Shown here piece by piece: positions 16,601 to 55,347 of a stretch of DNA of 64,000 bases. Each line of letters opens with the position of its first letter. The stretch's first letter is position 1. A program made the translations under genes and the position numbers. The notes beneath the pieces are model-generated. The model did not search any database. It saw only the letters and a program-made list of their open reading frames with translations, and had not been told where the DNA came from. The stretch comes from Scyliorhinus canicula (lineage: Eukaryota): NCBI RefSeq assembly GCF_902713615.1, contig NC_052162.1:103195811-103259810 (forward strand), written 5' to 3'.

Positions 16601-18049
16601 GACCTCTATACTCTCAATCTCCCGTACCCCAAAACTACAATCCAGGTTCCCATGCCCCTGCTGAATTAGTTTAAACCCCCCCAAAGAGCACTAACAAATC
16701 TCTCCCCCAGGATATTGGTGCCCCTCAGGTTCAGATGTAGACCATCCTGTCTATAGAGGTCCCACCTTCCCCAGAAAGAGCCCCAGTTATCCAGAAATCT
16801 GAATCCCTCCCGCCTGCACCATCCCTGTAGCCACGTGTTTAATTGCTCTCTCTCCCTATTCCTCATCTCACTATCACGTGGCACGGGCAACAACCCAGAG
16901 ATAACAACTCTGTTTGTTCTCGCTCTGAGCTTCCATCCTAGCTCCCTAAAGGCCTGCCTGACATCCTTGTCCCCTTTCCTACCTCTGTCGTTAGTGCCAA
17001 TGTGGACTACGACTTGGGGCTGCTCCCCCTCCCCCTTAAGGACCCGGAAAACACGATCCGAGACATCACTTACCCTTGGCTCAGCAATGGGGGGTTGGTT
17101 AGAGGAGGAGGTAGGGTGGGAAACACTCATGAAGTGTTTCGGGTTTAACTGTCACTTGCCAACAGCCCCTCCACAAACCACCTTCAACTTAGGCTGACCG
17201 CACTGCACGTATGCAAATTCCCCCAGAACAGCTGATCAGTAGCTCTGCTCTGCTGCCCTCTGATGGAAGCTTGTCTTCACTCAAACTCCTTGGGTCTCCT
17301 TCGCCGGTTCCCCTTCAACTTAGGCTGACCGCACTGCACGTATGCAAATTCCCCCAGAACAGCTGATCAGTAGCTCTGCTCTGCTGCCCTCTGATGGAAG
17401 CTTGTCTTCACTCAAACTCCTTGGGTCTCCTTCGCCGGTTCCCCTTCAACTTAGGCTGACCGCACTGCACGTATGCAAATTCCCCCAGAACAGCTGATCA
17501 GTAGCTCTGCTCTGCTGCCCTCTGATGGAAGCTTGTCTTCACTCAAACTCCTTGGGTCTCCTTCGCCGGTTCCCCTTCAACTTAGGCTGACCGCACTGCA
17601 CGTATGCAAATTCCCCCAGAACAGCTGATCAGTAGCTCTGCTCTGCTGCCCTCTGATGGAAGCTTGTCTTTACTCAAACTCCTTGGGTCTCCTTCGCCGG
17701 TTCCCCTTCAACTTAGGCTGACCGCACTGCACGTATGCAAATTCCCCCAGAACAGCTGATCAGTAGCTCTGCTCTGCTGCCCTCTGATGGAAGCTTGTCT
17801 TCACTCAAACTCCTTGGGTCTCCTTCGCCGGTTCCCCTTCAACTTAGGCTGACCGCACTGCACGTATGCAAATTCCCCCAGAACAGCTGATCAGTAGCTC
17901 TGCTCTGCTGCCCTCTGCTGGATGCTTGTCTTCACTCAAACTCCTTGGGTCTCCTTCGCCGGTTCCCCTTCAACTTAGGCTGACCGCACTGCACGTATGC
18001 AAATTCCCCCAGAACAGCTGATCAGTAGCTCTGCTCTGCTGCCCTCTGC
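13688..18049 (-). mobile_element. CR1 LINE no.1, near full length, inserted in the copia integrase
   Basis: ORF2 is 16420-14747 plus 14725-13883 in the same frame, broken by one TAG (IRN*LVERRQRV). Esterase half of ORF1 at 17130-16666. (gttctat)n 3' tail at 13688. Copia frame PIVTLPL|ARNFNDIVAMDLK rejoins across the insertion. Confidence 0.95.
17182..18049 (-). repeat. 131-bp tandem monomer array (~6.6 copies) forming the CR1 no.1 5' end
   Basis: Units start at 17182, 17313, 17444, 17575, 17706, 17837 and 17968; each carries ATGCAAAT. Confidence 0.95.
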
Positions 18050-20912
18050 CCTTGGCCAGGAATTTTAACGACATTGTGGCCATGGATCTTAAGATCTGGG
18101 ATAAAGCTAATAATATATTTATTTTGCATTTTGTAGATTTAGCAACCAGATTTAGTCAATCAACTATTGTACGAAGTAAAGAAAAGAGAGTAATTCTGGA
18201 TCAAATCATGGAACAATGGATAGGGACAGGAATGGGTCCACCGGCAAAATTCCTGACGGACAATGGGGGAGAATTTGCTAATGATGAGTTTAGGGATATG
18301 TGTGAAAATGTGAATATCACAGTTATGAATACGGCTGCGGAAAACCCATTTAGTAATGGTGTGTGTGAAAGAAACCATGCGGTAATAGATGTCATGCTCC
18401 AGAAAATTTTGGCAGATAGACCAAACTGCAAGCTAAATTCAGCTTTAGCATGGGCGGTACATGCAAATCGTTCATTGCAGATGGTTGGGGGCTACAGTCT
18501 CTATCAATTAGTGTTTGGCAGAAATCCTAAATTTTCGTCCATTTTAGATGACCAGCCTCTAGTTCGGGAAGGGTCTACAATTAGCTCAGTCTTTGCTGAG
18601 CATTTTAATGCATTACATAACAGCAGAAAAGCTTTTTTGAAAGCAGATGTCTCTGAAAGAATTCGCAGAGCTTTAAGACACAATGTACGGCCATCAGATA
18701 CCGTTTTTCAGCAAGGTGACATAGTATACAATAAGAGAGACAATTTTAATGAATGGAAAGGCCCAGGGAAGATCATAGGCATAGATGGCAAAACAATTAT
18801 TTTTCAACATGGTAATCAAACATGGTAGGGTATATTCATCTAGGATAATGGGTAGAGATTACAAATTTTCAAATTTAGACAGAGCAGACAGACATGACGA
18901 GGAACCAGAGTCATCTGGTACGCATGTGTTGCAAAGCTATGAGGACCAGTTAACTGATGTAGACAGGGTTTCTGTGGAGGAACGCAACACTTCTGATGAA
19001 TTAGAACAGGCCATTTTCTGAAAGGACAACTGCCATAAGTTGGTACAAAAGTGACATACCTACTTGAAGGGTCTAGTCAATGGAAGGCTGCAACTGTTAG
19101 AGCAGGGAAGGCCACTGGAAAGTATAAACATTGGTTGAATTTACAGCATTCTGTGGAAGGAGTCATGACAATGGATCGGGAACACGAAGTTCAAAAATGG
19201 AGGGCACAGAAACACAGTACCAGTTCAGATAGTACGTTGGATAGCGAACAGGTCCGCAGGAAAAGGAGTAGAAGCCGACATGCAGATGAAATTTTGGTGG
19301 CTTCCAATAAATTAGATGAAAAAGTTATCAAAGATGCCAAACAGCAAGAACTGCATAGTTGGAGTGAATTTGGGGTATACACGGAAGTACCAGATATGGG
19401 ACAAAGAGCTCTATCTCACAGATGGATTTGTACGGAAAAGGTTCTTCCAGATGGAACTTATAAGGCAAGGCCAGGCTTGTGGCAAAGGGATTTGAAGAAA
19501 ACTTAGAAGATCAGGATTTAAGGGGAGATTCACCTACAGCAGGAAAGGTTATTTTAAAGATCTTCTTGGCTCTATTAGCCACAAAGATATGGGAATGCAA
19601 ATCTATAGATATAAAAGCTGCCTTTTTGCAGGCGCATCAGCTCCAGAGAGATACTTTTCTCTGTCCTCATAAAGAGGCAGCTAACACAGAAGGGGTACTC
19701 TGGAAGTTGAACAAATGTGTATATGGATTAAATGATCCATATACCAGTCAAGAGTCTGGTATTTTTCCGGTAAGGTCAGTTTTGTTAAAGTTAGGCTGTT
19801 GCCAGTTGAAAGCAGATCTGGACATGTTTTACTGAAAATAAAGGAAATCTTTCTGGCATCTTTATGATGCATGTCGATGATTTTTTTGTGGGCTGGGACT
19901 CGTGATTTTGAAGCTATTGTAATCTCTGGTTTGAGGAAAGAATTCAGGGTTGGAAGTCAGGCTTCCAATGCATTTAAATATATTGGACTGGAAATCGGAC
20001 AGACTAAGTTAGGGGCAACTTTACGTCAGCAATCTGATTTGGAAAGCATCAGCCCGATAGCAATTAATCATGGACGGGTTTCACAAAAAGACGTAATGGT
20101 TTCAAAGATGGAAAAAGAGCAACTGCAAAGTTTAATTGGGCAACTGAATTGGTTAAGTAGACAGACTAGACCGGATGTGAGTTTTGATGTCTTAGAGTTG
20201 AGTACAAAAATTAATGATCCCAAAGTGGAAGACATAATAAGAGCAAATAAAGCATTGGTCAAACTAAAAATGCAGGAGTGTTTTTGAGGTTCCCGGTTTT
20301 AGGTGACCTTCGGCAGTTGAAACTCATGGTTTATAGTGATGCATCCTATGCAAATTTATGTGATGGGGTTTCAAGTGCAGGAGGTTTTATAATTTTCATT
20401 TTAGGGAACAATGTTAAATGTTGCCCTCATGTGTGGGAAACAAAGGAAATAAGGAGAGTGGTCAAAAGCACTTTGGCTGCTGAGACGTTAAGCCTTGGAG
20501 AGGCGGTGGATATGGCCTTTTATATATCTCAGATATTGATAGAAATTTTGGGATTAGGGTAATATGCCTTTTGAATGTCACATTGACAATAAATCCCTGT
20601 GATAAAATGTGCACTCTACAAAAAGTGTCAATGAAGAAAGATTAAGGATCGACATCGCAAGTTTGAAGCAGATGTTGGACAGAGGGGAGATGACAAAAAT
20701 TAAATGGGTCAACAGTAGCTATCAATTGTCAGACTGTTTTACAAAAAGAGGGGCTAGTTCACAGAAACTTTTGGATATTTTAAATGAAGGGCGCCTGTTT
20801 CTGTAACTTTTTTTTCCATATGAAAAAAAAGAGAAGGGGGAAATTGCGTGCGTTTTTGAGTTTCTTGTAATTTTGTTTTCACCTAATGTTTTTTCTCCAA
20901 GGAACGGGAGAG

Positions 20913-21737: not shown

Positions 21738-22055
21738 TCATAGAATCTACAGTGCAGAAGGAGGCCATTCGGCCAATCGAGTCTGCACCGGCTTTTGGAA
21801 AGAGCATCCCACCCAAGGTTAACACCTCCACCCTATCCCCATAACCCAGTAGCCCCACACAAAACTAAGGGCAATTGTGGACACCTAACCTGCACATCTT
21901 TGGACTGTGGGAGGAAACCGGAGCACCTGGAGGAAACCCACGCACACACGGGGAGGATGTGCAGACTCCGCACAGATAGTGACCCAAGCCGGAATCGAAC
22001 CTGGGACCCCGGAGCTGTGAAGCAATTGTGCTATTCACAATTCTACCGTGCTGCC
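21738..22055 (-). mobile_element. HE1 V-SINE inserted in CR1 ORF1
   Basis: Near identical to 8025-8382; host frame VVPL|SNRYTALDTV resumes after it. Confidence 0.9.
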
Positions 22056-22974
22056 TTAGTAACAGGTATACTGCTTTGGATACTGTTGGGGGGGGGGGGG
22101 GGGGGGGGGGGACTGACCAGGGGTCAGCCATGGGGTTCAGGTCTCTGGCACAGAGTCTGTCCCTATTGCTCAGAAGGGAAGGGGGGAGAGGAGTAGAGCT
22201 TTGGAGGAGTATTAGTCATTGGAGACTCCATAGTTAGGGGGATAGATAGGAGATTCTGTGGGAACGAGATAGACTCGCGGTTGGTGTGTTGCCTCCCAGG
22301 TGCCAGGGTCCGCGACGTCTCGGATCATGTTTTCGGGATCCTTAAGGGGGAGGGGGAGCGGCCCCAAGTCGTGGTCCACATAGGTACCAATGACATAGGT
22401 AGGAAAAGGGATAGGGATGTAAGGCAGGAATTCAGGGAGCTAGGGTGGAAACTTAGATCCAGGAAAAACAGCGATATTATCTCTGGGTTGTTCCACTTGC
22501 CACGTGCTAGCGAGTCGAGGAATAGGGAGAGAGAGCAGTTGAATACGTGGCTGCAGGGATGGTGCAGGAGGGAGGGTTTCAGATTCCTGGACAATTGGGG
22601 CTCATTCTGGGGTAGGTGGGACCTCTACAAACGGGATGGTCTACACCTGGACCAGAGGGGTACTAATATCCTTGGGGGGGGGGGGGGGGGGGGGGGAGTT
22701 TAAAATGCGTCTACTTCAATGCCAGGAGCATCCGGAATAAGGTGGGTGAGCTTGCCTGGGACTTCGATGTTGTGGCCATTTCGGGGACATGGATAGAGCA
22801 GGGCGAGGAATGGTTGTTGCAGGTTCCAGGGTTCAGATATTTCAGTATGCTCAGGGAAGGTGGTAAGAGAGGGGGAGGGGTGGCATTGTTAGTCAAGGGC
22901 AGTATTACGGTGGCTGAGAAGACATTTGATGACGACTCGAATACTGAGGTAGTATGGGCTGAGTTAAGAACCAG

Positions 22975-23812: not shown

Positions 23813-24160
23813 ATAGAACATAGAACATAGAACAGTACAGCACAGAACAGGCCCTTCGGCCCTCGATGTTGTGCCGAGCAATGATCACCCTACTCAAACC
23901 CACGTATCCACCCTATTCCCGTAACCCAACAACACCCCCTTAACCTTACTTATTAGGACACTACGGGCAATTTACCATGGCCAATCCACCTAACCCACAC
24001 ATCTTTGGACTGTGGGAGGAAACCGGAGCACCCGGAGGAAACCCACGCACACACGGGGAGGACGTGCAGACTCCGCACAGACAGTGACCCAGCCGGGAAC
24101 CGAACCTGGGACCCTGGAGCTGTGAAGCATTTATGCTAACCACCATGCTACCGTGCTGCC
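23813..24160 (-). mobile_element. HE1 V-SINE subfamily with (gttctat)n tail
   Basis: Near identical to 46597-46952; tail matches the 3' ends of the young CR1 copies. Confidence 0.9.
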
Positions 24161-26571
24161 TTTTTGAATAGCCGGCGACAATCCCTTATTTTACATTTTA
24201 AACATCCTAAACTGCGACGATTTCGAAGGGGCTCGAAATCATCTGGGAGAAAGGCAATTATGATGCGATGAGGCAAGGCCGAGGATGCATCGGCTGGAGA
24301 GGAAAACTGCAGGGGGTGGGCACAATGGAAATGTTCAACTACTGCGTGTCCTTGATAAGTCTGTACCTGTTAGGCAGGGAGGAAGTGGTTAAGCGAGGGA
24401 ACCATGGTTTACTAAAGTAGTTGAAACACTTGTCAAGAGGAAGAAGGAAGATGGTTCAATTAGGGCACTTGAGAGTTACAAGTTAGCTAGGAAGGCTCTA
24501 AAGAGGGAGCTAAGAAGAGCCAGGAGAGGACATGAGAAGTCTTTGGCAGGTAGGATCAAGGATAACCCTAAAGCTTTCTATAGATATGTCAGGAATAAAA
24601 GAATGACTAAGGTAAGAGTAGGGCCAGTCAAGGACAGTAGTGGGAAGTTGTGCGTGGAGTCCGAGGAGATAGGAGAGGTGCTAAATGAGTATTTTCCGTC
24701 CGTATTCACACAGGAAAAAGACAATGTTGTTGAGGAGAATACTGAGATACAGGCTACTAGACTAGAAGGGCTTGAGGTTCATAAGAAGGAGGAGGTGTTA
24801 GCAATTCTAGAAAGTGTGAAAATAGATAAGTCCCCTGGGCCTGATGGGATTTATCCTAGGATTCTTTGGGAAGCTAGGGAGGAGATTGCTGAGCCTTTGG
24901 CCTTGATCTTTAAGGCATCTTTGTCTACAGGAATAGTGCCAGAGGACTGGAGGATAGCATATGTTGTCCCCTTGTACAAGAAGGGGAGTAGAGATAACCC
25001 CGGTAACTATAGGCCAGTGAGTCTTACTTCTGTTGTGGGAAAAGTCTTGGAAAGGTTTATAAGAGATAGGATGTATAATCATCTGGAAAGGGATAATTTG
25101 ATTAGATATAGTCAACATGGTTTTGTGAAGGGTAGGTCGTGCCTCACAAACCTCATTGAGTTCTTCGAGAAGGTGACCAAACAGGTGGATGAGGGTAAAG
25201 CAGTTGATGTGGTGTATATGGATTTCAGTAAAGCGTTTGATAAGGTCCCCACGGTAGGGTATTGCAGAAAATACAGAGGCATGGGATTCAGGGTGATTGA
25301 GCAGTTTGGATCAGAAATTGGCTAGCTGATAGAAGACAAAGGGTGGTGGTTGATGGGAAATGTTCAGACCGGTGTCCAGTTACTAGTGGTGTACCACAAG
25401 GATCTGTTTTGGGGCCGCTGCTCTTTGTCATTTTTATAAATGACCTGGAGGAGGGTGTAGAAGGATGGGTGAGTAAATTTGCAGACGACACTAGAGTTGT
25501 GGACAGTGCAGAAGGATGTTACAATTTACAGAGGGACATAGATAAGCTGCAGAGCTGGGCTGACAGGTGGCAAATGGAGTTTAATGCAGAAAAGTGTGAG
25601 GTGATTCATTTTGGAAGGAATAACAGGAAGACAGAGTACAGGGCTAATGGTAAGATTCTTGGTAGTGTGGACGAGCAGAGAGATCTCGGTGTCCATGTCC
25701 ATAGATCCCTGAAAGTTGCCACCCAGGTTGAGAGGGTTGTTAAGAAGACGTACGGTGTTAGCTTTTATTGGTAGAGGAATTGAGTTTCGGAGCCATGAAG
25801 TCATGTTGCAGTTGTACAAAACTCTGGTGCGGCCGCATTTGGAGTATTGCGTGCAGTTCTGGTCGCCGCATTATAGGAAGGATGTGGAAGCACTGGAAAG
25901 GGTACAGAGGAGATTTACAAGGATGTTGCCTGGTATGGAGGGAAGATCATATGAGGAAAGGCTGAAGGACTTGAGGCTGTTTTCGTTAGAGAGAAGAAGG
26001 TTAAGAGGTGACTTAATTGACGCATACAAGATGATCAGAGGATTAGATAGGGTGGACAGTGAGAGCTTTTTTCCTCGGATGGTGATGTCCAGCACGAGGG
26101 GACATAGCTTTAAATTGAGGGGAGATAGATGTAGGACAGATGTCAGAGGTAGGTTCTTTATTCAGAGAGTAGTAAGGGCATGGAATGCCCTGCCTGCAAC
26201 AGTAGTGGACTCGCCAACATTGAAAGCATTCAAATGGTCATTGGATAGGCATGTGGACGATAAGGGAATAGTGTAGAGGGACTTTAGAGGGGTTTCACAG
26301 GACGGCGCAACATCATGGGCCAAAGGGCCTGTACTGCGCTGTAATGTTCTATGTCCTATGTTCTAAATGTTCATTCCTTCTTACGTACCCTATCTACATC
26401 CCTCATTTATTTTGTACATCTCGATCAGGTCCACCCTCAGCCTTCTCTGCTCAGAGGAAAGTAACTCCAGCCTAACCAGCCTCCTAATGTCTGAAATACT
26501 CCAGCCCAAGCAACATCTTGGTGAATCTCCGAAGCAATCACATCCTTCCTAGGTGTGGTGACCAGAATGGT

Positions 26572-31610: not shown

Positions 31611-31677
31611 ACCCACTTAAGCCCCCACTTCCAACCCATCACTGTCACCCAATAATGCCTCCTAATCTTTTTTTTTG

Positions 31678-31885
31678 GACACTAAGGGCAATTTAGCTTG
31701 GCCAATCCACCTAACCTGCACGTCTTTGGACTGTGGGAGGAAACGGGAGCACCTAGAGGAAACCCATGCAGACACGGGAAGAACGTGCATTCTCCGCACA
31801 GACAGTGACCCAGCTGGGAATTGAACCTGGGACCCTGGCGCTGTGAAGCCACAGTGCCAGCCACTTGTGCTACCATGCTGCCCAC
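31678..31885 (-). mobile_element. HE1 V-SINE 5' part
   Basis: HE1 head and V core. Confidence 0.8.
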
Positions 31886-32265
31886 TGAATACTCAGTAAT
31901 TTGGCCTCCACAGCCTTCTGCAGCAAAGAGTTCCACAGATTCACCACCCTCTGGCTGAAGAAATTCCTCCTCATCGCTGTTTTAAATGATCATCCCTTGA
32001 GTCTGAGATGGTGTCCTCTGCTTCTAGTTTTTCCTACAAGTGGAAACATCCTTTCCACGTCCACTCTATCCAGGCCTTGCAGTATCTTGTAAGTTTCAAT
32101 AAGATCCCACCTCATCCTTCTGAACTCCAACGAGTACTTATAGGATACTGCGTGGCCTGGATAGAGTGGACGTGGAGAGGATGTTTCCACTAGTGGGAAA
32201 AACTAGAAGCAGAGGACACAATCTCAGCCTAAAGGGACGATCCTTTAAAACAGAGATGAAGAGGA

Positions 32266-34121
32266 TGGCGGGCGGGAAGCGGCCGCGCAACGGAGGGTTC
32301 CCAATTTGAAACGGCATTTTCGGGGCTTTAAGCCCGGTCCCAAGGTCCACGGAGGCTTCAAAGACATGGAGAAGGCACGGAGGAGGCACAGCAGAAGAGG
32401 ATGTCAAGGGTCGGTAAGAAAACGGCCTTTAAAAGAACAGCTGAGGGCCCGTTAGGGAGAGGAGAGGTCAGCACGGGGTCACCAGGAAAAAAGGAGGCTG
32501 GAGCATCAGGGGAGGCCGCATTGCTGAAGGCTGAAGAAATAACAAAGGTAATGGCTGCAAAATTCGAAAGGCAGTTTGCAAAGCACCTGGAGGCGATGAG
32601 GAAGGAATTGAGGGAGGTTTTGAGTGTGCTGGTGGAGGAGGCGATTTCCTCGGTGACGGCGGTGGTGGCGAGTGCAGTGGCGGAGGTGCGGGCGCAAGGA
32701 GAGGCGCTGAAGGTAGTGGAGGATACGGTGGCGCAACACGGTGATCAACTTACCTCAATGGGGAAGAAGATGCGGAAGGTGATGGAGGTGAACAAGGATC
32801 TGCAAGGAAAATTGGAAGACCTGGAAAACAGGTCCAGGCGACAGAATTTGAGGATTGTGGGGCTGCCCGAAGGAGCTGAAGGGCCGAGGCCGACAGAGTA
32901 TTTTGCCGCTATGCTGGCGAAGCAATTGAGGGAGGGGGAGGATCCCTCCCGATATGAGCTGGATCGGGCTCATCGGTCGGGGAGGCCTGTACCAAAGGCG
33001 GGTGAGCCGCCAAGAGTAGTGATCTTGTGCTTCCATAGGTACTGTGTGAAGGAGAAGGTCCTATGCTGGGCCATGCAGAAGCGGGTGGTGCAGTGGGCTG
33101 GAGCTGGTATACGTGTATACCAGGACTTTACGGCGGAGCTGGCGAGGAGGCTGGCTGCTTTCAACCGGGTGAAGAGGATTGGCATTGTATATCCAGCGAA
33201 GCTGAGGGTGACTTATCAGTTCAAGGACTTTTATTTTCGAGCAGCGGAGGAGTTTGCGAAGGCAGAAGGACTGTGGCAGAACTGAGAAGTTGAGATATGG
33301 CCATGTGCCGATGTAACCTCAGGACTGTATTTTCTTCATTTTTGTCTCTTCTTTTTTGTTTTACTGCGTGCAGGTGTATGGGCTAATGGAGCCAATGTTG
33401 TATATATTTGGACAAGGGAAGTGCTGGGACTTGCACTCGAAGTGAGGGCTCATTGGGGTGTAGGTGGATATGCAGGGTTTGTGTGCTAAAAGGGGATTTC
33501 TGGGCTTTCCTAGGGCCGGGCAAAGGGGTAAGGGACCTGGGTGGGGGCCTCCGCGCTGGCCGGTTTAAACCGGTCAGTGAACGGGAGTGAGGTTGGGGGA
33601 GGGGCCGCGGTCATCGGAGCCTGGCAGAACAGGTTCCGAGTGGTCTAGCTGGGGTGGAAAGTTGGGGGGAAGAAACCGAGGTTGGGGGGAGGAGTTTTAC
33701 AAGAGGCAGTGGGCGGGAGGAGTTGGAGGGGAGGGGAGGGTTTACAACTCTTGGGTATCACATACGGTACTTTTTCAGAGGTTGGACGGTGTTGAGTATG
33801 GGGGGTGGGGGAGGGGATTCTGGGGTGACCATGGGCGGGGGGGGGGGGGGGGGTAAGGGAGGAGTGGACACTATGGTGACCATGGGCGGTCCCGGACTCC
33901 TTTCTCTTTTTCTCTTTTGTTTTTTGTTTCCACCGTGGGAGGGTTTGTTTCATTGGATACATTTATTGATAGGTGGGCTGTTGTTTGGGGTGGTGGGAGG
34001 ATGGGATCGTTGTTATTGTTAAGGGGATTGACTTTGTATTTGTTACCGTTTACTGTTTGGGGGTGGGGGGTGAATTTTGGGGGAAAATATGAAAATGGAG
34101 AATAAAACATTTTTTAAAAAA
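32266..34121 (+). mobile_element. ORF1-only L1 derivative (HAL1-like) with TSD
   Basis: 5' UTR, ORF1, G-rich spacer, 3' UTR with AATAAA and A tail; no EN or RT motifs found; TSD agagatgaagagga at 32252-32265 and 34122-34135. Confidence 0.85.
32401..33285 (+). CDS. L1-type ORF1 protein (coiled coil, RRM, CTD), 294 aa
   Basis: Uninterrupted ATG-to-stop ORF with LENRSRRQNLRIVGLPEG, ELDRAHR, RVYQDFT and YPAKLRVTY motifs. Confidence 0.85.
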   Translation: MSRVGKKTAFKRTAEGPLGRGEVSTGSPGKKEAGASGEAALLKAEEITKVMAAKFERQFAKHLEAMRKELREVLSVLVEEAISSVTAVVASAVAEVRAQGEALKVVEDTVAQHGDQLTSMGKKMRKVMEVNKDLQGKLEDLENRSRRQNLRIVGLPEGAEGPRPTEYFAAMLAKQLREGEDPSRYELDRAHRSGRPVPKAGEPPRVVILCFHRYCVKEKVLCWAMQKRVVQWAGAGIRVYQDFTAELARRLAAFNRVKRIGIVYPAKLRVTYQFKDFYFRAAEEFAKAEGLWQN

Positions 34122-34460
34122 AGAGATGAAGAGGAATTTCTGCAGCCAGAGGGTGGTGAATCCGTGGAACACTTTGATCAATAAGGGGATCAGAGTTTAT
34201 GGGGAGAAGGCAGGAGAATGGGGATGAGAAAAATATCAGCCATGATTAAATGGCAGAGCGGACTCGATGGGCCGAGTAGCCTAATTCTGCTCCTATGTTT
34301 TATGGTTTTATGGTCTAATCCGGACTGTCACAGTATTGAACCAGCTCTTCTCAATGTCACAAATTCAATCCAACGTGAATGTCAATCCACTCACCTGCTT
34401 AAGGAGCAGTGCTCCGAAAGTTAGTGATTCCAAGCAAACCTGTTGGACTTTAACCTGGTG

Positions 34461-35040
34461 ATTGGCTGTTCCGGGGAGGTTTGCATACGTGCAGTGCGGT
34501 CAGCGTAAGTTGACGGTGTACCTGCGCAAGTGACCCGAGGAATTCGAGTGAAGGCAAGCATCCAGCAGAGGGCAGCAGAGCAGAGCTTCTGATTGGCTGT
34601 TCTGGGGAGATTTGCATACGTGCAGTGCGGTTAGCGTAAATTGACGGTGCACTTGCGCAAGTGACCCGAGGAGTTTGAGTGAAGGCAAGCATCCAGCAGA
34701 GGGCAGCAGAGCAGAGCTTCTGATTGGCTGTTCTGGGGAGATTTGCATACGTGCAGTGCGGTCAGCGTAAGTTGACGGTGTACCTGCGCAAGTGACCCGA
34801 GGAGTTCGAGTGAAGGCAAGCATCCAGCAGAGGGCAGCAGAGCAGAGCTTCTGATTGGTTGTTCTGGGGAGATTTGCATACGTGCAGTGCGGTCAGCGTA
34901 AGTTGAAGGTGTACCTGCGCAAGTGACCCGAGGAGTTCGAGTGAAGGCAAGCATCCAGCAGAGGGCAGCAGAGCAGAGCTTCTGATTGGCTGTTCTGGGG
35001 AGATTTGCATACGTGCAGTGCGGTCAGCGTAAGTTGAAGG
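34461..35040 (+). repeat. 131-bp tandem monomer array (~4.4 copies) forming the CR1 no.3 5' end
   Basis: Units start at 34461, 34592, 34723, 34854 and 34985; ATTGG in each, ATTTGCAT in four of five. Confidence 0.95.
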
Positions 35041-38000
35041 TGGTTTGTGAAGGGGCTGTTCTCGAGTGACAGCTTTACCCAAAACACTACTTACGTAGTG
35101 TCTCCCACCCATCCTCCTCCACTAACCAAAAAAAAAAGTTCTGTCCATCGGATTGCTAAACTAACAAGTTTTTTATTAAAAAAATATCGTTTTCAGTAGT
35201 TGGGAAGTTAGTTCAGTGGGAATGGAGGATAGGGCAGTTGAATGTTCCTCCTGCAGAATGTGGGAGGAAAGGGTCACCTCGAGTGTCCCTGCTGGCTACG
35301 TCTGCGGGAAGTGCACCCAACTCCAGCTCCTCGAGAACCGCGTTAGGGAGCTGGATGAACTTCGGATCATTCGGGAGGCGGAGGGCGTTATTGAGAGGAG
35401 TTATAGGGAGGTAGTCACACCTCAGCTAAAAGAAGAAGGTAGATGGGTTACCATCAGGGAAACGAGGGGGAACCGGCAGGCAGTGCAGGGGATCTGTGGT
35501 CGGTCCCCTCAATAACAAGTATACCGTTTTGGATACTGTTGGGGGGACGACTTACCAGGGGTAAGCAATGGGGCACAGGTCTCTGGCACAGAGTCTGTCC
35601 CTGTTGCTCAGAAGGGAAGGGAGAAGAGGAACAGAGCACAGGGTACTCCATAGTTAGAGGTGGTTCTGTGGGAACGAAAGAGACTCACGGTTGGTGTGTT
35701 GCCTCCCAGGTGCCAGGGTTCATGATGTCTCTGATCGTGTTTTGGGGATCCTTAAGGGGGAGGGGGAGCAGCCCCAAGTCGTGGTCCACATAGGTACCAA
35801 CGACATCGGTAGGAAGAGAGATGGGGATTTGAGACAGAAATTCAGGGAGCTAGGGTGGAAGCTGAGAGCTAGAACAAACAGAGTTGTTATCTCTGGGTTG
35901 TTACCCGTGCCACGTGCTAGCGAAGTGAGAAATAAGGAGAGAGAGGAGTTGAACACGTGGCTACAGGGATGGTGCAGGAGGGAGGATTTTGGTTTCCTGG
36001 ATAATTGGGGCTCATTCTGGGGTGGGTGGGACGTCTACAAACAGGATGGTCTTCACCTGAACTAGAGGGGTACCAATATTCTGGGGGGGGGAGATTTGCT
36101 AGTGCTCTTCGGAGGGGTTTAAACTAATTCAGCAGGGGGATGGGAACCTAAATTGTAGTCCCAGTGTACAGGATGTTGAGAGTAGTGAGGTCAGGGATAG
36201 GGTTAAAAGTTCGAAAGAGGGCACCGGCAAGCAAGATGCTGGTTTGAAGTGTGTCTACTTCAACGCCAGGAGCATCCGGAATAAGGTGGGTGAGCTTGCA
36301 GCATGGGTTGGTACCTGGGATCTCGATGTTGTGCTGATTTCGGAGACATGGGTAGAGCAGGGACAGGAATGGTTGTTGCAGGTTCCAGGATTTAGATGTT
36401 TCTGTAAGAACAGAGAAGATGGTAAAAGAGGGGGGGGGTGTGGCATTGTTAATCAAGGAAAGTATTACGGCGGCAGAAAGGACGTTTGAGGACTCGTCTA
36501 CTGAGGAAGTATGGGCCGAGTTAGGAACAGGAGAGGAGAGGTCACCCTGTTGGGAGTTGTCTATAGACCTCCGAATAGTTCCAGAGATGTAGAGGAAAGG
36601 ATAGAAAAGATGATTCTCGACAGGAGCGAGAATAACAGGGTAGTTGTTATGGGGGACTTTAACTTTCCAAATATTGACTGGAAATACTATAGTTCGAGTA
36701 CTTTCGATGGGTCAGTTTTTGTGCAGTGTGTGCAGGAGGGTTTTCTGACACAGTATGTAGATAGGCCAACAAGGGGCGATGCCACATTGGATTTGGTACT
36801 GGGTAATGAACCCGACCAGGTTTTAGATTTAGATGTAGGTGAGCACTTTGGTGATAGTGATCACAATTCGGTTATGTTTACTTTAGCGATGGGCAGGGAT
36901 AGGTATATACCGCAAGGCAAGAATTATAGCTGGGGGAAAGACAATTATGATGCTATTCGGCAAGATTTAGGATGTATAGGTTGGGGAAGGAAACTGCAGG
37001 GGATGGGTACAATCGAAATGTGGAGCTTTTTCAAGGAACAGCTACTGCGTGTCCTTGATAAGTATGTACCTGTCAGGCAGGGAGGAAGTTGTCGAGCAAG
37101 GGAACCGTGGTTTACTAAGGATGTTGAAGCACTTGTCAAGAGGCAGAAGAAGGCTTATGTTAGGATGAGACATGAAGGCTCAGTTAGAGCACTTGAGAGT
37201 TACAAGTTAGCCAGGAAGGACCTAAAGGGAGAGTTAAGACGAGCGAGGAGAGGACACGAAAAGTCGTTGGCGGATAGGATCAAGGAAGACCCTAAGGCTT
37301 TCTATAGGTATATCAGGAACAAAAGAATGACAAGAGTAACATTAGGGCCAATCAAGGATAGTAGTGGAAAGTTGTGTGTGGAATCAGAGGAGATAGAAGC
37401 GTTAAATGGATATTTTTCGTCAGTGTTTACACTGGAGAAAGACAATGTTGTCGAGGAGAATACTCAGGTACAGTCGGCCAGGCTAGATGGGATTGAGGTT
37501 CACAAGGAGGAGGTGTTAGCAATTTTGGAAAGTGTAAAAATAGATAAGTCCCCTGGGCCAGATGGGATTTATCCTAGGATTCTCTGGGAAGCCAGGGAGG
37601 AGATTGCAGAGCCTTTGTCCTTGATCTTTATTTTGTCTTTGTCGACAGGAATAGTGCCGGAAGACTGGAGGATAGCAAATGTTGTCCCCTTGTTCAAGAA
37701 GGGGAGTAGAGACAACCCTGGTAATTATAGACCTGTGAGCCCTACTTCGGTTGTGGGTAAAATGTTGGAAAAGGTTATAAGAGATAGGGTTTATAATCAT
37801 CTTGAAAAGAACAAGTTGATTAGCGATACTCAACACGGTTTTGTGAAGGGTAGGTCATGCCTCACAAACCTTATTGAGTTTTTTGAGAAGGTGACCAAAC
37901 AGGTGGATGAGGCTAAAGCGGTTGATGTGGTGTATATGGATTTCAGTAAGGCGTTTGATAAGGTTCCCCACGGTAGGCTATTGCAGAAAATACAGAAGTA

Positions 38001-46259: not shown

Positions 46260-46952
46260 GGCGGCACAATGGTCAGCACTGTTGCTTCACAACTCCAGGG
46301 ACCCGAGTTCGATTCCCGGCTTGGGTCACTGTCTGTGTGGAGTCTGCACGTTCTCCCTGTGTCTGCGTGGGTTTGCCCTGGGAGCTCCGGATTCCTCCCA
46401 CAAGTCCTGAAAGTCATGCTCGTTGGGTGAATTGGACATTCTGAATTCTCCCTCAGTGTACCCGAACAGGTGCAGGAGTGTGGTGACGAGGGAATTTTAA
46501 CAGTAACATCATTGCAGTGTTAATGTAAGCCTACTTGTGACATTAATAAAGATTATTATTGTCCTTTAAAATCAGGGAGATGGAAGCCTGTGACTATAGA
46601 ACATAGAACAGTACAGCACAGAACAGGCCCTTCGGCCCTCGATGTTGTGCTGAGCAATGATCACCCTACTCAAACCCACGTATCCACCCTATACCCGTAA
46701 CCCAACAACCCCCCCCCCCCCCCCCCCTTAACCGTACTTTTTTTTTAGGACACTACGGGCAATTTAGCATGGCCAATCCACCTAACCCGCACGTCTTTGG
46801 ACTGTGGGAGGAAACCGGAGCACCCGGAGGAAACCCACGCACACACGGGGAGGACGTGCAGACTCCGCACAGACAGTGACCCAGCCGGGAATCGAACCTG
46901 GGACCCTGGAGCTGTGAAGCATTTATGCTAACCAACATGCTACCGTGCTGCC
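46260..46952. mobile_element. two adjacent V-SINEs (46260-46560 +, ATT tail; 46597-46952 -, CR1-type tail)
   Basis: Motif identity with the other copies. Confidence 0.85.
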
Positions 46953-49175
46953 CCTATGTATCCACACCCTCTCCCTCACTTCATTGTACGCCCTCACCAG
47001 CAGTGGCCCCAAGTTTGCCCCACACTTTTCATAAAACTCGACCGGGAACACGTCTGGCCCCGGGGCCTTCCCTGCTTGCATCGCCCCTACACCATCCATC
47101 AACTCTCTCAATTAGGATCCCCAGCCCCTGAACGAGCCCCTCCTCCACTTTCTGAAACTCCAACCCATCCAGGATCCTCCGCTTCCCTCCTCCCTAGTCA
47201 GGGGCTCCGATGCGTAGAACCTCTGATAAAAGGCCTTCACCCCTTCCGGGTTCATCACCACCTTACCCTTATCAACCCTAAATCTACTAACCTCCCTCGC
47301 TTTCTCAACATCCTACTTTCTCAACATCTTACCCGTACACTGCACCTCTGACCATCCGCAGCTGACCCACCTCCTTCTCCATAGAAACTAGCCTGAACGC
47401 CATCAGGAGCCTCTGCCTCCAGCGCCTCAGAGTATCTCCTGTCCACCCTCAAAATCGCATCCACCAACCTTGCCCTCTCCTCGCTCCATCGAGTATACAC
47501 TCGATATGATATAAACTCCCCCCTGACTACTGCCTTGAGTGCCTCCCACAGCGTGGCAGCTGTGACCTCCCCCGTGTCGTTCAGCTCCAAGTAGCCCCAA
47601 ATGGCAGTCCTCACCCGCTCACACACCTCCTCATCCAGCCTCCACTGTGGCCATTGGGCCTCTCCCTAAGCCACACACAAATCAACCCAATGCGGCGCGT
47701 GGTCAGAAACTACAATCGCCGAACACTCGAGAGTCGGCCACCCTCGCCAGCAGCATCTTGTCCAACACAAAAAAGTGCACATGGTATAAGTATGAAAACT
47801 CCTTCGCCCCCGGCCTCCCAAACCTCCACGGGTCCACACCCCCTCAGCTCCCTCGCCACTGCCGACACCCTGGACAATTTGGGACTCGACCGGTCCAAGC
47901 TCAGATCTATGACCGTATTAAAATCATCCCCCATAATCAACAGATGCGAGTCCAAGTTCGGAATCTTCCTAAACGCTGCCTCATAAAATCCACGTTGTCC
48001 CTATTTGGGGCATAAACGTTTACCAGAACCCTTCAACTTCCCACTAACCATCACATATCTACCCTGCCGAATTCACCACAATACTTCCTACCTCGATCGC
48101 AACCTGCTTATTGACCAACACCGCCATCCCCTTGTCTTCATATCCAGCCCCAAATGGAACACCTGCCCCACCCATCCCTTTCTCAGCCTCATCTGATCCC
48201 CCCAATTTCAGGTGCGTCGCCTGCAAAAAAGTCACGTCTGCCTTCAAAATCCTTGTGTGCGTGAACACACGCAACTGTCTAACTGGCCCATTCAAAACCC
48301 TCACATTCCACGTGACCAGCCCGGCAACCACTCACTTCACTCCCGTTAACAAGCCCATCCACCCAGCTGGCATGGTGGCCCCGACAAAGTCCTTCAATCA
48401 CCCCATCTCCCTCCAGTTACACCCCTCCCCCGACAACCCCTAAAGAGTAACAAAAGGCACACTCATCATCACTGCTCCCCCGCCAGGACGTGCCCCGGAA
48501 TACCCACCCGCAAACATTTTAAAAAGTACATGAGGGTGGTCTTAATCCAATTGAACCCGGCACTTCTCTTCGCCAGCTCCGCACCCAGGTCCTGCTACAC
48601 CCGCAGCTCACTCCCTTCCCAGGTACACTTCTTGATCTGCCTCAACTTGATCTTCTCCTTGTGAAGAAAGCGGTGCAACCGTAGCACCATCGCACCTGGT
48701 GGCTCACCCGCCTTGGACCTCCTCCGCAGCGCCCTGTGTGCTCGGTCCACCTCCAGAAGGCCCCCTCCCCTATCCATCGCTCCAATATCCTTGCCACATA
48801 GACAGTGGCCTCCGCACCTTCGATGCCTTCAGGCATCCCGACAATCCTTACATTTTGCCACCTGGAACAATTATTCAGATCTCCATCTTCTCCCTCAGCC
48901 TCTTCTGGCTCTCTCGCTGCACTCCCACTGCTGCCACGAACGACGCCAACTGCTCGTTTTTCCCCACTGTCTCCTCCACTTTCTGGATCGCCTGACCCTG
49001 GGATTCCAGCCTCTGCTCAACTCGCTCAATCCCACATCTCTGCTGTTCTACCACCTTGGCCAGGTCTTCCAGGGCCTCTTTATAATGCTGCAGGAAGTTA
49101 TTGTTCAGTAACTTTACCAACTGCCCGTCACTCACTGGACAGGCAGCACCTTGTCCTCCGCCATCTTTACCTGTG

Positions 49176-52100
49176 ATGTGAAGATGCCGGCATTGGACTG
49201 GGGTGAGCACAGTAAGAAGTCTTACAACACCAGGTCAAAGTCCAACATGTTTGTTTCATAGACTAGCTTTTGGAACACTGCTCCTTCCTCAGGTCACCTA
49301 GTGTTTGAAAGGAACATGTTGGACTTAGAACATAGAACATCACAGCGCAGTACAGGCCCTTCGGCCCTCGGTGTTGTGCCGACCTGTGAAACCACTCTAA
49401 AGCCCATCTACACTATTCCCTTATCATTCATATGTTTATCCAATCACGATTTGAATGCCCTTAGTGTTGGCGAGTCCACTACTGTTGAAGGCAGGGCATT
49501 CCACGCCCTTACTACTCTCTGAGTAAAGAACCGACCTCTGACATCTGTCCGATATCTATCTCCCCTCAATTTAAAGCTATGTCCCAGACAGCACCATTCG
49601 AGGAAAAAGGCTCTCACTGTCCACCCTATCTAATCCTCTGATCATCTTGTATGCCTCAATTAAGTCACCTCTTAACCTCTCTAACGAAAATAGCCTCAAG
49701 TCCCTCAGCCTTCCCTCATAAGATCTTCCCTCCATACCTGGCAACATCCTGGTAAATCTCCTCTGCACCCTTTCCAATGCTTCCACATCCTTCCTATAAT
49801 GCGGCGACCAGAATTGCACGCAATACTCCAAATGCGGCCGCACCAGAGTTTTGTACAGCTACAACATGACCTCATGGCTCCGAAACTCAATCCCTCTACC
49901 AATAAAAACTAACACACCGTACGCCTTCTTAACAACCCTCTCAACCTGGGTGGCAACTTTCAGGGATCTATGTACATGGACACCGAGATCTCTCTGCTCG
50001 TCCACACTACCAAGAATCTTACCATTAGCCCAATACTCTATCTTCCTGTTATTCCTTCCAAAATGAATCACCTCACACTTTTCTGCATTAAACTCCATTT
50101 GCCACCTCTCAGCCCAGCTCTGCAGCTTATCTATGTCCTTTGTAACTTGTAACATCCTTCTGCACTGTCCACAACTCCACCGACTTTAGTGTCGTCTGCA
50201 AATTTACTCACCCATCCTTCTACGCCCTCCTCCAGGTCATTTATAAAAATGACAAACAGCAGTGGCCCCAAAACAGATCCTTGGGGTCCACCACTAGTAA
50301 CTGGACTCCAGGCTGAACATTTCCCATCAACCACCTGCCTCTGTCTTCGTACAGCGAGCCAATTTCTGATCCAAACTGCTAAATCACCCTGAATCCCATG
50401 CCTCCGTATTTTCTGAAATAGCTTACTGTGGGGAACCTTATCAAATGCTTTATTGAAATCCATATACACCACATCAACTGCTTTACCCTCGTCCATCTGT
50501 TTGGTCACCTTCTCAAAGAACTCAATAAGGTTTGTGAGGCATGACCAAATGAGGCATGACAAAACCGTGTTGACTATCCCTAATCAAATTATTCCTTTCT
50601 AGATGATTATAAATCTTATCACTTTTATAAACATTTCCAAGACTTTGCCCACAACAGAAGTAAGGCTCACTGGTCTATAGTTACCGGGGTTGTCTCTACT
50701 CCCCTTCTTGAACAAGGGGACAACATTTGCTATCCTCCAGTCTTCTGGCACTATTCCTGTAGACAATAATGACATGAAGATCAAAGCCAAAGGCTCAGCA
50801 ATCTCCTCCCTAGCTTCCCAGAGAATCGTGGGATAAATCCCATCCGGCCCAAGGGACTTATCTATTTTCACACTTTCCAGAATTGCTAACACCTCCTGCT
50901 TATGAACCTCAAGCCCATTCTAGTCTCGTACCCTAGTCATTCTTTTATTCCTGACAGATCTATAGAAAGTTTTAGGGTTATCGTTGATCCTACCTGCCAA
51001 AGACGTCTCACGTCCCCTCCTGGCCCTTCTTAGCTCTCTCTTTGGGTCCTTCCTAGCTAACTTGTAACTCTTGAGCGCCCTAACTGAACCTTCACGTCTC
51101 ATCTTTACATAAGCCTCCTTCTTCCTCTTGACAAGTGTTTCAACTACTTTAGTAAACCACGGTTCCCTCGCTCGACCACTTCCTCGCTGCCTGACAGTTC
51201 CATACTTATCAAGGACACGCAGTAGCTGTTCCTTGAACAAGCTCCACATTTCAATTGTGCCCATCCCCTGCAGTTTCCTTCCCCATCCGATGCATCCGAG
51301 GTCTTGCCTCGTCGCATCATAATTGCCTTTCCCCCGGATATAACTCTTGCCCTGCGGTATATACCTATCCCTTTCCATCACTAAAGTAAACGTAATCGAA
51401 TTGTGGTCACTATCACCAAAGTGCTCACCAACCTCCAAATCTAACACCTGTCCTGGTTCATTACCCAATACCAAATCCAATATGGCCTCGCCTCTTGTTG
51501 GCCTATCTACATATTGTGTCAGGAAACCTTCCTGCACACATTGGACAAAAATGGACCCATCTAAAGTACTCGAACTATTGCGTTTCCAGTCAATATTTGG
51601 AAAGTTAAAGTCCCCCATAACAACTACCCTGTTACTTTCGCTCCTATCCAGAATCATCTTTGCAATCCTTTCCTCTACACCTCTGGAACTTTTCGGAGGC
51701 CTATAGAAAACCCCTAACAGGGTGACCTCTCTTTTCGTGTTTCTAACCTCAGCCCATACTACCTCAGTAGACGAGTCCTCATCAAACGTTCTTTCTGCCA
51801 CCGTAATACTGTGCCAGAGACCTGTACCCCATGGCTTACCCCGGTAAGTTTCCCCCCCCCCCCCCCCAAAACAGTATCCAAAGCGGTATACTTGTTACTA
51901 GGGGGAACGACCACGGGATCCCTGTACTGACTGCTTCCTCGCAGCCCTTCTCACCGTCACCCATATATCTTTATTCTTTGGAGTAACTACATTCCTGAAG
52001 CCTCTATCTATGACCACCTCTGCCTCCCGAACGATCCAAAGTTCATCCAGCTCCAGTTCCCTAACACGGATTCTGAGGAGCTGGAGATGGGTGCTCTTCC

Positions 52101-53781: not shown

Positions 53782-54903
53782 ATGGAAGGAAAAAGCACCA
53801 TTCACACTGGGAATAAAATATGGAAATGCGGGGATTGTGGGAAGGGATTCAGTTATCCGTCCAAGATGGAAATTCATCAGTGCAGTCGCACTGCAGAGAG
53901 ACCGTTCACCTGTTCTGAGTGTCGGAAGGGATTCACTCGGTCATCACACCTGCAGGCACACCAGCGAGTTCACACTGACGAGAGACCTTTTAAATGTCCA
54001 GACTGTGGGAAGTGTTTTAAAACTTCCAGGGAACTTATGATCCATCAACGCGTTCACAGTGACGAGAAACTTTTCAGGTGTCCTGAATGTGGGACTGGGT
54101 TCAAGACATCATCTAATCTCACTGTACACCAGCGTGTTCACACTGGGGAGAGGCCTTTCACCTGCTCAGAGTGTGGGAAGGGATTCAGCCAGTTATCTAC
54201 CCTGCAGAAACACCAGCGAGTGCACACTGGGGAGAAGCCATTCACTTGCTCAGAGTGTGGGATGCAATTCAATAATTCAACCAATCTGCAGACACACCAG
54301 CAAGTTCACACTGATGAGAGACCGTATCAATGCTCAGACTGTGGGAAGTGCTTTAAAAGTTCTGTGGCGCTGATGCACCATCAACGTGTTCACACTGATG
54401 AGAGACCCTTCAGGTGCTCTCAATGTGGAACTGGGTTCAGGCGATCATCTGACCTCACTAAACACCAACGCACTCACACTGGGGAGAGACCGTTCACATG
54501 CCCTGAGTGTGGGAAGGGATTTACTCAGTCATCTGCCCTGCGTACACACCAGCGAGTTCACACTGGAGAAAGACCATTCACCTGCTCCGAGTGTGGAAAA
54601 GGATTCACTCTGTCGTCTGACCTGCTGAGACATCAGCGGGTTCACACTGACGAGAGACCTTTTAAATGCCAAGACTGTGTGAGGTGTTATAATAGTTCCC
54701 AGGAACTGATGTCCCATCAACGGGTTCACACTGATGAGAGACCATTCAGCTGCTCTCACTGTAAGACTAGTTTCAGGCAATTATCTCAACTCACTGTACA
54801 CCAGCGAATTCATACGGGGGAGAGACCGTTCACCTGCTGTGTGTGTGGCAAGGGGTTTACTCAGTCATCCCACCTGCGGAGACATCAGCGAGTTCACAAG
54901 TAA
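53782..54903 (+). CDS. C2H2 zinc-finger protein, 12 intact plus 1 degenerate finger, no KRAB domain seen
   Basis: Tandem CxxC-x12-HxxxH units with TGERPF/TDERPF linkers; ATG at 53782; splice acceptor ttcacag| at 53672; AATAAA at 55017 and 55028. Confidence 0.9.
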
Positions 54904-55347
54904 CTACAGTGATTGAATTTTGCTGTTGATAACATCCAGGGTTGAACAGTGTTCATTTCAGACTCGTCCTGCTAATGTCAATTATCTCCAACTTAGACAT
55001 ATGTGTTAATGTTCTGAATAAAAGTCAAATAAATCAGCTTTATTAAACAGTGTATCAAGTCTTTTTAATATCCCTGACGCACGTTTGTTCCTTTTGAAGG
55101 ATTCTCCCTCTCCCCTGTCTCCTCCATTCTCACCTCCAACAAGTGTGAGGAGCTAAAGCATCTTCTTTGTAACTAAGATTGAGACAATCTGATCAGCTAC
55201 CTTTACTGTTTCCCCCCCTTCCATGATTCCACCATGACAAAGGGCCTCTAAAGTTCTGCCTTGTCTGAGCCCTGAACACGCATCTTATCTTGTATTTAAT
55301 TTCTCATCTTTCCTCATGCTGTCTCAGTGCTCATCTTGTCCATGTTT

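What the first reader, a model, noticed from the sequence alone, without database searches (positions are those of the whole stretch)
32266..34121. HAL1-like (half-L1) non-autonomous element with an open ORF1 and no ORF2
A 1.85-kb unit of 5' UTR, uninterrupted 294-aa ORF1, spacer, 3' UTR and polyA is bounded by a 14-bp TSD at a TT|AAAA site, with no trace of EN or RT. HAL1 elements are described mainly from mammals, so an independent shark lineage would be notable. The ORF has an ~8-codon in-frame gap relative to the ORF1 at 1617-1844 (FNRVK|RIG versus FNQIKSTLFKKKVKFG) but stays open, which could reflect youth or selection. It is also raw material for L1TD1-like domestication.
Basis: partly seen in the sequence, partly recalled or inferred. 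Interest (0 to 1): 0.7.

Follow-up and report, generated by a model that had tools for sequence, protein, structure and literature searches.

The report
Catshark ORF1-only half-L1 retroposon copy
This is an old, neutrally decaying copy of a short jumping element in a catshark-type genome that kept only the RNA-binding gene (ORF1) of an L1 retrotransposon and has no copying-enzyme gene, a shark counterpart of the mammalian "half-L1" elements that this scan has already met elsewhere in the same genome.

Summary
Window 32266-34121 is a 1,856-nt insertion flanked by an exact 14-bp target-site duplication. It interrupts a host repeat whose in-window paralog is uninterrupted. It carries a 134-nt 5' UTR, an open 294-aa ORF1, 836 nt of non-coding G/T-rich sequence, AATAAA and a 6-A tail. 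ORF1 is a true L1 ORF1p by sequence and by fold. No endonuclease or reverse-transcriptase trace was found.

It is probably not a one-off. Contigs from DNA runs of two organism labels cover every part with dozens of distinct variants per site. Structurally different copies bridge the spacer/3' UTR junction. One contig shares the 5' end with a different flank. End-to-end linkage could not be shown because the contigs are short.

This copy is not young or selected:
- It is about 10% different from other copies.
- Its listed differences from the majority are 5 synonymous to 18 non-synonymous, the neutral ratio.
- It lacks 8 + 3 codons in the C-terminal domain.

The scan found this family before on other DNA of the same genome (s1-195944, s1-207403 and others). 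I could not check that those loci are the same family.

Verdict: a HAL1-like ORF1-only L1 derivative, a new member of a known kind, of moderate interest.

The parts
32252..32265 (.). 5' copy of the 14-bp target-site duplication AGAGATGAAGAGGA, preceded by TTTAAAAC
   Evidence: Read directly. The host-repeat paralog is continuous across this point.
32266..32400 (+). 5' UTR, 134 nt, G+C-rich, with one short out-of-frame upstream ATG at 32367
   Evidence: A 450-nt contig of run X1 aligns from 32263 onward and has 238 nt of other sequence upstream, so another copy has the same 5' end in a different flank (table 8, record 3).
32401..33285 (+). ORF1, 294 aa plus stop, an L1 ORF1p-type protein
   Evidence: ORF; best relative is a 305-aa Scyliorhinus torazame protein, 75% identity; others are L1 ORF1/Transposase_22 proteins of fishes. 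Human L1 ORF1p 2YKP is hit at E 7.8e-5 by the single sequence and at 4.7e-24 by a profile. Foldseek against 2YKP gives E 1.2e-9.
32530..32838 (+). Coiled-coil helix, residues 44-146
   Evidence: AlphaFold2 model, one long helix, pLDDT 88-98.
32845..33123 (+). RRM domain, residues 149-241, starting at the conserved NRSRRQNLRIVGLPEG motif
   Evidence: pLDDT 89-97. TM 0.77 to the human ORF1p central domain 2W7A. Invariant columns.
33133..33282 (+). C-terminal domain, residues 245-294, with an 8-codon gap at nt 33177/33178 and a 3-codon gap at 33237/33238 relative to relatives
   Evidence: pLDDT falls to 57-73 here. Other copies carry extra letters at 33239 and give a loose-end pile at 33240 (tables 4 and 7).
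33286..33813 (+). Non-coding spacer after ORF1: T-rich tract at 33331-33369, then a G-rich stretch. Depth of other copies dips at 33727-33813.
   Evidence: Multi-copy at depths like ORF1 up to 33726. A similar T-rich tract follows ORF1 in the other L1 at 1940-1985.
33814..34121 (+). L1-type 3' UTR: 15-nt direct repeat GGTGACCATGGGCGG at 33824-33838 and 33875-33889 around a G run, T-rich tracts at 33901-33929, an abundant core at 33991-34032, AATAAA at 34101-34106 and A6 at 34116-34121
   Evidence: Same layout and same terminal motif as the 3' end of the EN-bearing L1 at 3840-4103. Copies with -49, +22 and +35 nt around 33833-33864 are seen.
34122..34135 (.). 3' copy of the target-site duplication
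32094..32251 (+). Host repeat, left part; its right part continues at 34136-34300
   Evidence: Collinear at 89.5% with the paralog at 31924-32094 (minus) across the insertion point.

Best explanation
The stretch is one old insertion of a multi-copy, L1-derived, non-autonomous retroposon family of catsharks. The family consists of an L1 5' UTR, ORF1, the L1 inter-ORF spacer and an L1-type 3' UTR, with ORF2 missing. Inferred mechanism: a unit-length RNA is transcribed from the 5' UTR and polyadenylated at the AATAAA. ORF1p made from source copies coats its own RNA. The endonuclease/reverse transcriptase (ORF2p) of autonomous L1s in the same genome is borrowed in trans. ORF2p nicks a TTTT|AAA-type site and copies the RNA in by target-primed reverse transcription, which leaves the short A tail and the 14-bp duplication. 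What is shown: the anatomy, the L1 ORF1p identity, the absence of ORF2, the insertion signature, and the multi-copy state of all parts in two organism labels. What is inferred: trans-mobilisation by L1 ORF2p, a role for ORF1p in it, and end-to-end identity of architecture among copies. The copy in this window is itself dead weight. It has drifted neutrally and its ORF1 lacks 11 codons in the C-terminal domain.
For: The ORF is open and the unit is bounded by a 14-bp TSD inside a repeat whose paralog is uninterrupted. ORF1 is an L1 ORF1p. No EN or RT trace was found. The 3' end shares its layout and the motif AATAAAA-N-T6-9-A4+ with the 3' end of an L1 that still has endonuclease remnants. These are the only two matches in 64 kb, with 0 expected, though the pattern was defined post hoc. 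In one search, DNA contigs of organism labels A and B cover ORF1, spacer and 3' part, with 20-88 distinct contigs per listed site. Depth rises from 5' to 3' within ORF1, as 5' truncation would give. A contig shares the 5' end but has a different upstream flank. Some contigs in both labels share this copy's 9-nt-shorter state at 33239, which suggests a subfamily. A 305-aa intact relative exists in S. torazame as a single-exon gene model, with no other called gene within 6 kb. Leads from the scan, not tested here: eight notes of ORF1-only units in this genome, six of them 1,824-1,873 nt long.
Against: No single contig links ORF1, spacer and 3' UTR in another copy, because contigs are 130-450 nt. 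Depth of other copies drops 5-40 fold at 33727-33813. This could mean that many relatives carry something else there, possibly ORF2, and that only a minority share this junction. ORF1 and spacer depth may include autonomous parents at 85% likeness or more. No second copy lies in this window. The A tail is very short. RNA reads come mostly from other copies and may be read-through transcripts. No mobilisation evidence of any kind is available.
Confidence: 0.75

Rival explanations
1. A host gene or a single master locus derived from L1 ORF1 (L1TD1-like) is expressed, and its mRNA is repeatedly retroposed by L1. On this reading the copies are processed pseudogenes of one source rather than a self-propagating transposon family.
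For: The unit looks like an mRNA: 5' UTR, ORF, 3' UTR, AATAAA and an A tail. S. torazame carries annotated single-exon gene models of this ORF, two of them named as isoforms. This copy evolves neutrally.
Against: There are dozens of distinct variants per site in two organism labels. A subset of copies in both labels shares this copy's 9-nt-shorter state at 33239, which suggests more than one source lineage. The 3' UTR and spacer have L1 architecture. Three different S. torazame models lie on one chromosome at 62-80% identity to this ORF, which does not look like one conserved gene.
Confidence: 0.12
2. A one-off event: a full-length L1 lost ORF2 by internal deletion at this locus or in the one RNA that gave this insertion. 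Only its separate parts are repeated elsewhere, as parts of ordinary L1s.
For: Internally deleted L1s exist in the same window: the element at about 1074-4103 keeps ORF1, endonuclease remnants and the 3' UTR but no RT. There is a depth dip at 33727-33813. No whole-length second copy was seen by me.
Against: Contigs and raw reads from structurally different copies span 33762-33916. The dip bin still has summed depth 767 (label A) and 2,765 (label B), where single variant contigs have depth about 4-16. A one-off deletion in one genome should not be multi-copy under a second organism label. Other scan notes of 1.82-1.87-kb units are leads only.
Confidence: 0.08
3. A composite. ORF1 comes from an L1, but the 836-nt tail comes from an unrelated repeat, with its spacer part (about 33370-33726) perhaps in reverse orientation. 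It would then be a chimeric retroposon rather than a simple ORF2 deletion.
For: In stranded polyA RNA reads the strand flips from about 7:1 sense over ORF1 to about 7:1 antisense over 33379-33639. A T-rich tract at 33331-33369 could be the A tail of a reverse-oriented insert.
Against: DNA depth of the spacer is no higher than that of ORF1, so no separate abundant family is indicated. The T-rich tract is A-rich on the minus strand and would prime oligo-dT internally, which explains the antisense pile. A similar T-rich tract follows ORF1 in another L1 of the window.
Confidence: 0.05

Closest known systems
Mammalian HAL1 (half-L1) elements (Smit 1999; Bao and Jurka 2010, as cited in PMC5753468, PMC13756887, PMC4859970)
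   Same: Both are non-autonomous derivatives of L1 that encode only ORF1p, are about 2 kb long, are retroposed with an L1 insertion signature, and are presumed to use L1 ORF2p in trans. HAL1s arose several times independently.
   Different: The host is a cartilaginous fish. ORF1 is closest to shark and teleost L1 ORF1s (30-41% identity, 75% to a S. torazame protein) and only 22-23% identical to human ORF1p, so it is not a descendant of the mammalian HAL1 lineages. All 17 papers listed in the held library's 'half-L1' search came up in mammalian or unrelated contexts. I read the HAL1 passages of four of them, and all four treat HAL1 as mammalian. Bao and Jurka 2010 itself could not be read.
Autonomous L1 elements of the same genome (two degraded examples in this window at about 1074-4103 and about 47321-49210)
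   Same: They share the type of ORF1 (coiled coil, RRM, CTD), a T-rich tract after ORF1, and a G-run plus T-rich 3' UTR that ends in AATAAAA-N-T run-A run.
   Different: They keep endonuclease remnants downstream of ORF1. Their ORF1s are only 26% and 45-48% identical to this one. The studied unit has no ORF2 sequence at all.
L1TD1 (domesticated L1 ORF1 gene of mammals, PMC4161310)
   Same: It is also an ORF1-derived coding sequence without ORF2.
   Different: L1TD1 is a single-copy host gene under selection. Here the sequence is multi-copy, TSD-flanked, and drifting neutrally in this copy.

Membership tests
HAL1-type (ORF1-only, L1-derived non-autonomous retroposon) | Coding region homologous to L1 ORF1p | tested here: met
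   human L1 ORF1p 2YKP is hit by sequence and by fold, and relatives carry PF02994.
HAL1-type (ORF1-only, L1-derived non-autonomous retroposon) | No ORF2 (endonuclease or reverse transcriptase) in the unit | tested here: met
   no Pfam hit and no similarity to in-window L1 ORF2 remnants in 33286-34121.
HAL1-type (ORF1-only, L1-derived non-autonomous retroposon) | Inserted as a unit by L1-type retroposition (TSD, A tail, T/A-rich target) | tested here: met
   a 14-bp TSD, a paralogous empty site, the target TTTAAAAC, AATAAA plus A6. The tail is short.
HAL1-type (ORF1-only, L1-derived non-autonomous retroposon) | A family of independent insertions that share the ORF1-only architecture | tested here: inconclusive
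   every part is multi-copy in two organism labels, other copies bridge the spacer/3' UTR junction, and one shares the 5' end. No contig is long enough to show the whole unit elsewhere. Scan notes are untested leads.
HAL1-type (ORF1-only, L1-derived non-autonomous retroposon) | Mobilised in trans by L1 ORF2p | not testable with these tools
   Inference from the insertion signature and from L1s with endonuclease remnants in the same window.
Mammalian HAL1 lineages (common descent with Repbase HAL1) | Sequence descent from the mammalian HAL1/L1 lineage | not tested
   No HAL1 reference sequence is available in these tools. The nearest relatives are shark and fish ORF1s, so an independent origin is inferred.
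L1 ORF1p, Pfam Transposase_22 (PF02994) | Match to the Pfam model above threshold | tested here: not met
   no hit for this sequence. Six of 10 aligned relatives match at E down to 2.8e-8. PDB sequence and fold matches make the homology secure all the same.
L1TD1-like domesticated ORF1 gene | Single-copy locus under purifying or positive selection | tested here: not met
   It is multi-copy. The ratio is 5 synonymous to 18 non-synonymous differences from the majority of copies, which is the neutral ratio.

The most novel reading that the evidence does not exclude
Catsharks carry a large ORF1-only family, possibly hundreds to thousands of copies. It arose independently of mammalian HAL1, still has intact and transcribed source copies (such as the 305-aa S. 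torazame model), and depends on its own ORF1p to hijack L1 ORF2p. That would make ORF1-only parasitism a recurrent vertebrate-wide strategy rather than a mammalian oddity.
Probability: 0.15. Interest if true: 0.65.

Novelty: new member of a known kind. Interest (0 to 1): 0.4.

Why it matters
Half-L1 elements bear on an open question in LINE biology: does ORF1p made in cis give a non-autonomous RNA better access to ORF2p made by another element? In the literature I could search they are treated as a mammalian phenomenon. A separately evolved ORF1-only family in cartilaginous fish would show that this route to parasitising L1 is recurrent. It would also give a second, distant system in which to compare which parts are retained (5' UTR, ORF1, inter-ORF spacer, 3' terminal motif). 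For genome annotation, such units explain 'uncharacterized protein' gene models in catshark assemblies. This particular copy adds little, because it is an old, neutrally decaying member.

Tried and rejected
- A second copy in the window: none by blastn, blastn-short, nhmmer or tblastn. Only two other L1 families were seen.
- Protein word search with the C-terminal 110 aa, to catch fragments on short contigs: blank.
- Earlier findings by sequence and by relatives: blank.
- Bao and Jurka 2010 (PMC2923044): not held. One literature search failed on a short term.
- Rfam: nothing inside the element, only sub-threshold miRNA-family hits on the hairpin of the host repeat.
- The bacterial promoter/terminator scan is irrelevant here and found nothing.
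- Youth or selection as the reason for the open frame: rejected on the neutral substitution pattern and the roughly 10% distance to other copies.
- dN/dS among copies: not possible, because no nucleotide sequence of another copy could be fetched.

Full report
**What is there.**
Window 32266-34121 (+) is a discrete 1,856-nt insertion.
- It is flanked by the exact 14-bp repeat AGAGATGAAGAGGA at 32252-32265 and 34122-34135.
- The two flanks are halves of one host repeat. A paralog of that repeat at 31924-32094 (minus strand) is collinear at 89.5% across the insertion point and carries the duplicated 14-mer only once. The duplication is therefore a target-site duplication, not a chance match.
- The target reads TTTAAAAC immediately 5' of the duplication. 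On the other strand this gives a TTTT|AAA-type nick site, as L1 endonucleases use (established knowledge).
- The unit ends in AATAAA (34101-34106), a T6 run and only six A (34116-34121).
- If the duplication is read as 19 bp with one mismatch, the tail is shorter still.

**Coding content.**
The only long sense ORF is 32401-33285, 294 aa and open.
- Pfam does not hit it directly, but its relatives are L1 ORF1 proteins. The closest is a 305-aa 'uncharacterized protein' of Scyliorhinus torazame at 75% identity over the full length. The rest are teleost and coelacanth 'L1 transposable element RRM domain' or Transposase_22 proteins at 30-41%.
- The single sequence finds the human L1 ORF1p trimer 2YKP at E 7.8e-5. 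A 10-sequence profile finds it at 4.7e-24.
- An AlphaFold2 model from 48 aligned sequences has mean pLDDT 82.7. It shows a disordered N-terminus, one long helix (residues 44-146), an RRM (149-241, pLDDT about 90-97) and a C-terminal domain (245-294).
- Foldseek ranks the human ORF1p structures first, at E 1.2e-9. The RRM alone reaches TM 0.77 to 2W7A.
- The C-terminal domain has pLDDT of only 57-73. It is where this copy lacks 8 codons (between residues 259 and 260) and 3 codons (between 279 and 280) relative to all aligned relatives.

**What is absent.**
The 836 nt after the stop codon have no coding signal.
- No Pfam hit was found on any ORF of 60 aa or more on either strand.
- tblastn with 51 translated pieces of the ORF2 regions of the two other L1s in the window gave no similarity.
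- The composition is G- and T-rich with a strong G-over-C skew.

**Why the tail looks like L1.**
A second L1 in the window (about 1074-4103) keeps ORF1 and endonuclease remnants but no RT.
- Its 3' end has the same layout as the studied unit: a long G run, then G/T-rich sequence, then T-rich tracts, then AATAAAA, a T run and an A run.
- The pattern AATAAAA-N1-2-T6-N0-3-A4 occurs only at these two 3' ends in 64 kb, with none expected in 100 shuffles. I derived the pattern from the two ends, so this shows exclusivity, not independent significance.
- That L1 also has a T-rich tract some 50 nt after its ORF1, as the studied unit does at 33331-33369.
- I read the unit as L1 5' UTR plus ORF1 plus inter-ORF spacer joined to an L1 3' UTR. 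The join lies somewhere in 33727-33838.

**Is it a family or a one-off?**
The window has no second copy, so I laid public runs on 31900-34500 at 85% likeness (runs, organism names coded).
- In DNA contig sets of two organism labels (X1 label A, X14 label B) every bin of the element is covered.
- At listed sites, 20-88 different contigs cover ORF1, 35-76 cover the spacer and 31-64 cover the 3' part. Each part therefore exists in at least dozens of distinct variants under both labels.
- Depth rises from the 5' UTR (about 1-2 thousand in X1) through ORF1 (5-15 thousand), and the spacer stays similar (3-10 thousand up to 33726).
- Single variant contigs have depth about 4-16, so these sums suggest hundreds or more copies. 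This is a rough inference, and the tool warns that depth is not a copy number.
- A 450-nt contig aligns from 32263 into ORF1 and has 238 nt of unrelated sequence upstream. That is another copy with the same 5' end in another flank.
One contig skips 33815-33863 with 52 nt or more on each side. One replaces 33806-33872 by 18 other letters. Raw RNA reads carry 22 or 35 extra repeated letters at 33833.
- These cannot come from this locus, so the junction region is shared.

**Caveat on the family question.**
Depth falls 5-40 fold at 33727-33813 (767 in X1, 2,765 in X14).
- This segment may be hypervariable.
- Or it may be the only truly family-specific segment, with ORF1, spacer and 3' UTR depth inflated by autonomous relatives.
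- Or many relatives may carry something else there.
- With contigs of 130-450 nt I cannot tell, and I could not show a whole second unit.
- The scan's own index lists eight notes of ORF1-only units in this genome, six of them 1,824-1,873 nt long. Two follow-up reports reached the same reading. These agree with mine, but I could not test them. Nor could I check by sequence that those loci belong to the same family as this copy.

**State of this copy.**
- The longest aligned pieces of other copies differ from it by about 6-14%, in ORF1 and in non-coding parts alike (table 8; a small and biased sample).
- At 23 listed ORF1 sites most or nearly all other copies, and most RNA reads, carry a different letter. 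Most of the majority letters I checked restore the residue seen in the S. torazame protein.
- These differences are 5 synonymous and 18 non-synonymous. Random change in this ORF would give 23.5% synonymous and 4.6% stops. The copy has therefore drifted without constraint.
- The 9-nt-shorter state at 33239 is shared by a minority of contigs in both labels, so it may mark a subfamily rather than decay in place.

**Expression.**
A stranded polyA single-cell RNA run of label A (X24, 1% sampled) gives reads over the whole unit.
- Reads are about 7:1 sense over ORF1 but about 7:1 antisense over 33379-33639.
- Most carry the majority letters, so they come from other copies.
- The antisense pile sits just upstream, on the minus strand, of the tract that is A-rich on that strand. 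Internal oligo-dT priming of read-through RNA is the likeliest cause (inference).
- I draw no conclusion on autonomous transcription.

**Comparison with the known.**
- HAL1 is defined as a non-autonomous L1 derivative encoding only ORF1p. It is found throughout mammals and has arisen several times (PMC5753468, PMC13756887). ORF1-containing truncated L1 RNAs can be retrotransposed in culture (PMC4859970).
- The 17 papers listed in the held library's 'half-L1' search came up in mammalian or unrelated contexts. I read the HAL1 passages of four of them, and all four treat HAL1 as mammalian. The key paper, Bao and Jurka 2010, is not held.
- The element here meets the anatomical definition and works like a HAL1. 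By descent it is a shark lineage of its own.
- It is not L1TD1-like, being multi-copy, TSD-flanked and neutral.

**Verdict.**
It is a new member of a known kind. The scan has already found the family on other DNA of the same genome, and this copy is an old, inactive one. Interest 0.4.

Noticed in passing
window 31924-32265: The host repeat is present as an inverted pair (31924-32094 minus, about 32094-32265 plus), which forms a hairpin of about 240 nt right next to the insertion. Rfam gives sub-threshold hits to MIR7533 (93 bits, cut-off 230) and MIR2630 (91 bits, cut-off 144) at 31993-32236.
   Followed up: partly
window 1074-4103 (+): This is a degraded L1 of another family. It keeps ORF1 (frameshifted) and endonuclease remnants (about 2650-3100), has no RT, and has a complete L1-type 3' end, so it is an internally deleted L1 of about 3 kb.
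   Followed up: partly
window 47321-49210 (-): A third L1 has ORF1 pieces 45-48% identical to the studied ORF1. The start of an endonuclease domain follows within about 100-200 nt.
   Followed up: no
window 33991-34032: A 40-nt core of the 3' UTR is far more abundant than the rest of the element (summed depth 60 thousand in X1, 173 thousand in X14). Other copies diverge on both sides of it. It may be a 3' motif shared with other, more numerous repeat families.
   Followed up: no
window 33379-33639: Stranded polyA RNA reads flip to about 7:1 antisense here, next to a tract (33331-33369) that is A-rich on the minus strand. Internal priming is suspected but not tested.
   Followed up: partly
window 53859-54914 and 58052-59340: Two arrays of 84-nt (28-aa) repeats have the C2H2 zinc-finger linker pattern, probably exons of zinc-finger genes.
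   Followed up: no
window 17050-18135 and 34328-35113: Tandem arrays of 131-nt units. The second begins about 200 nt downstream of the studied insertion.
   Followed up: no
window 8166-8390, 21840-22064, 23945-24169, 31666-31890, 46737-46961, 55452-55676: Six copies of a tRNA-like SINE (core GGGAATCGAACCTGGGACC), 76-95% alike.
   Followed up: no
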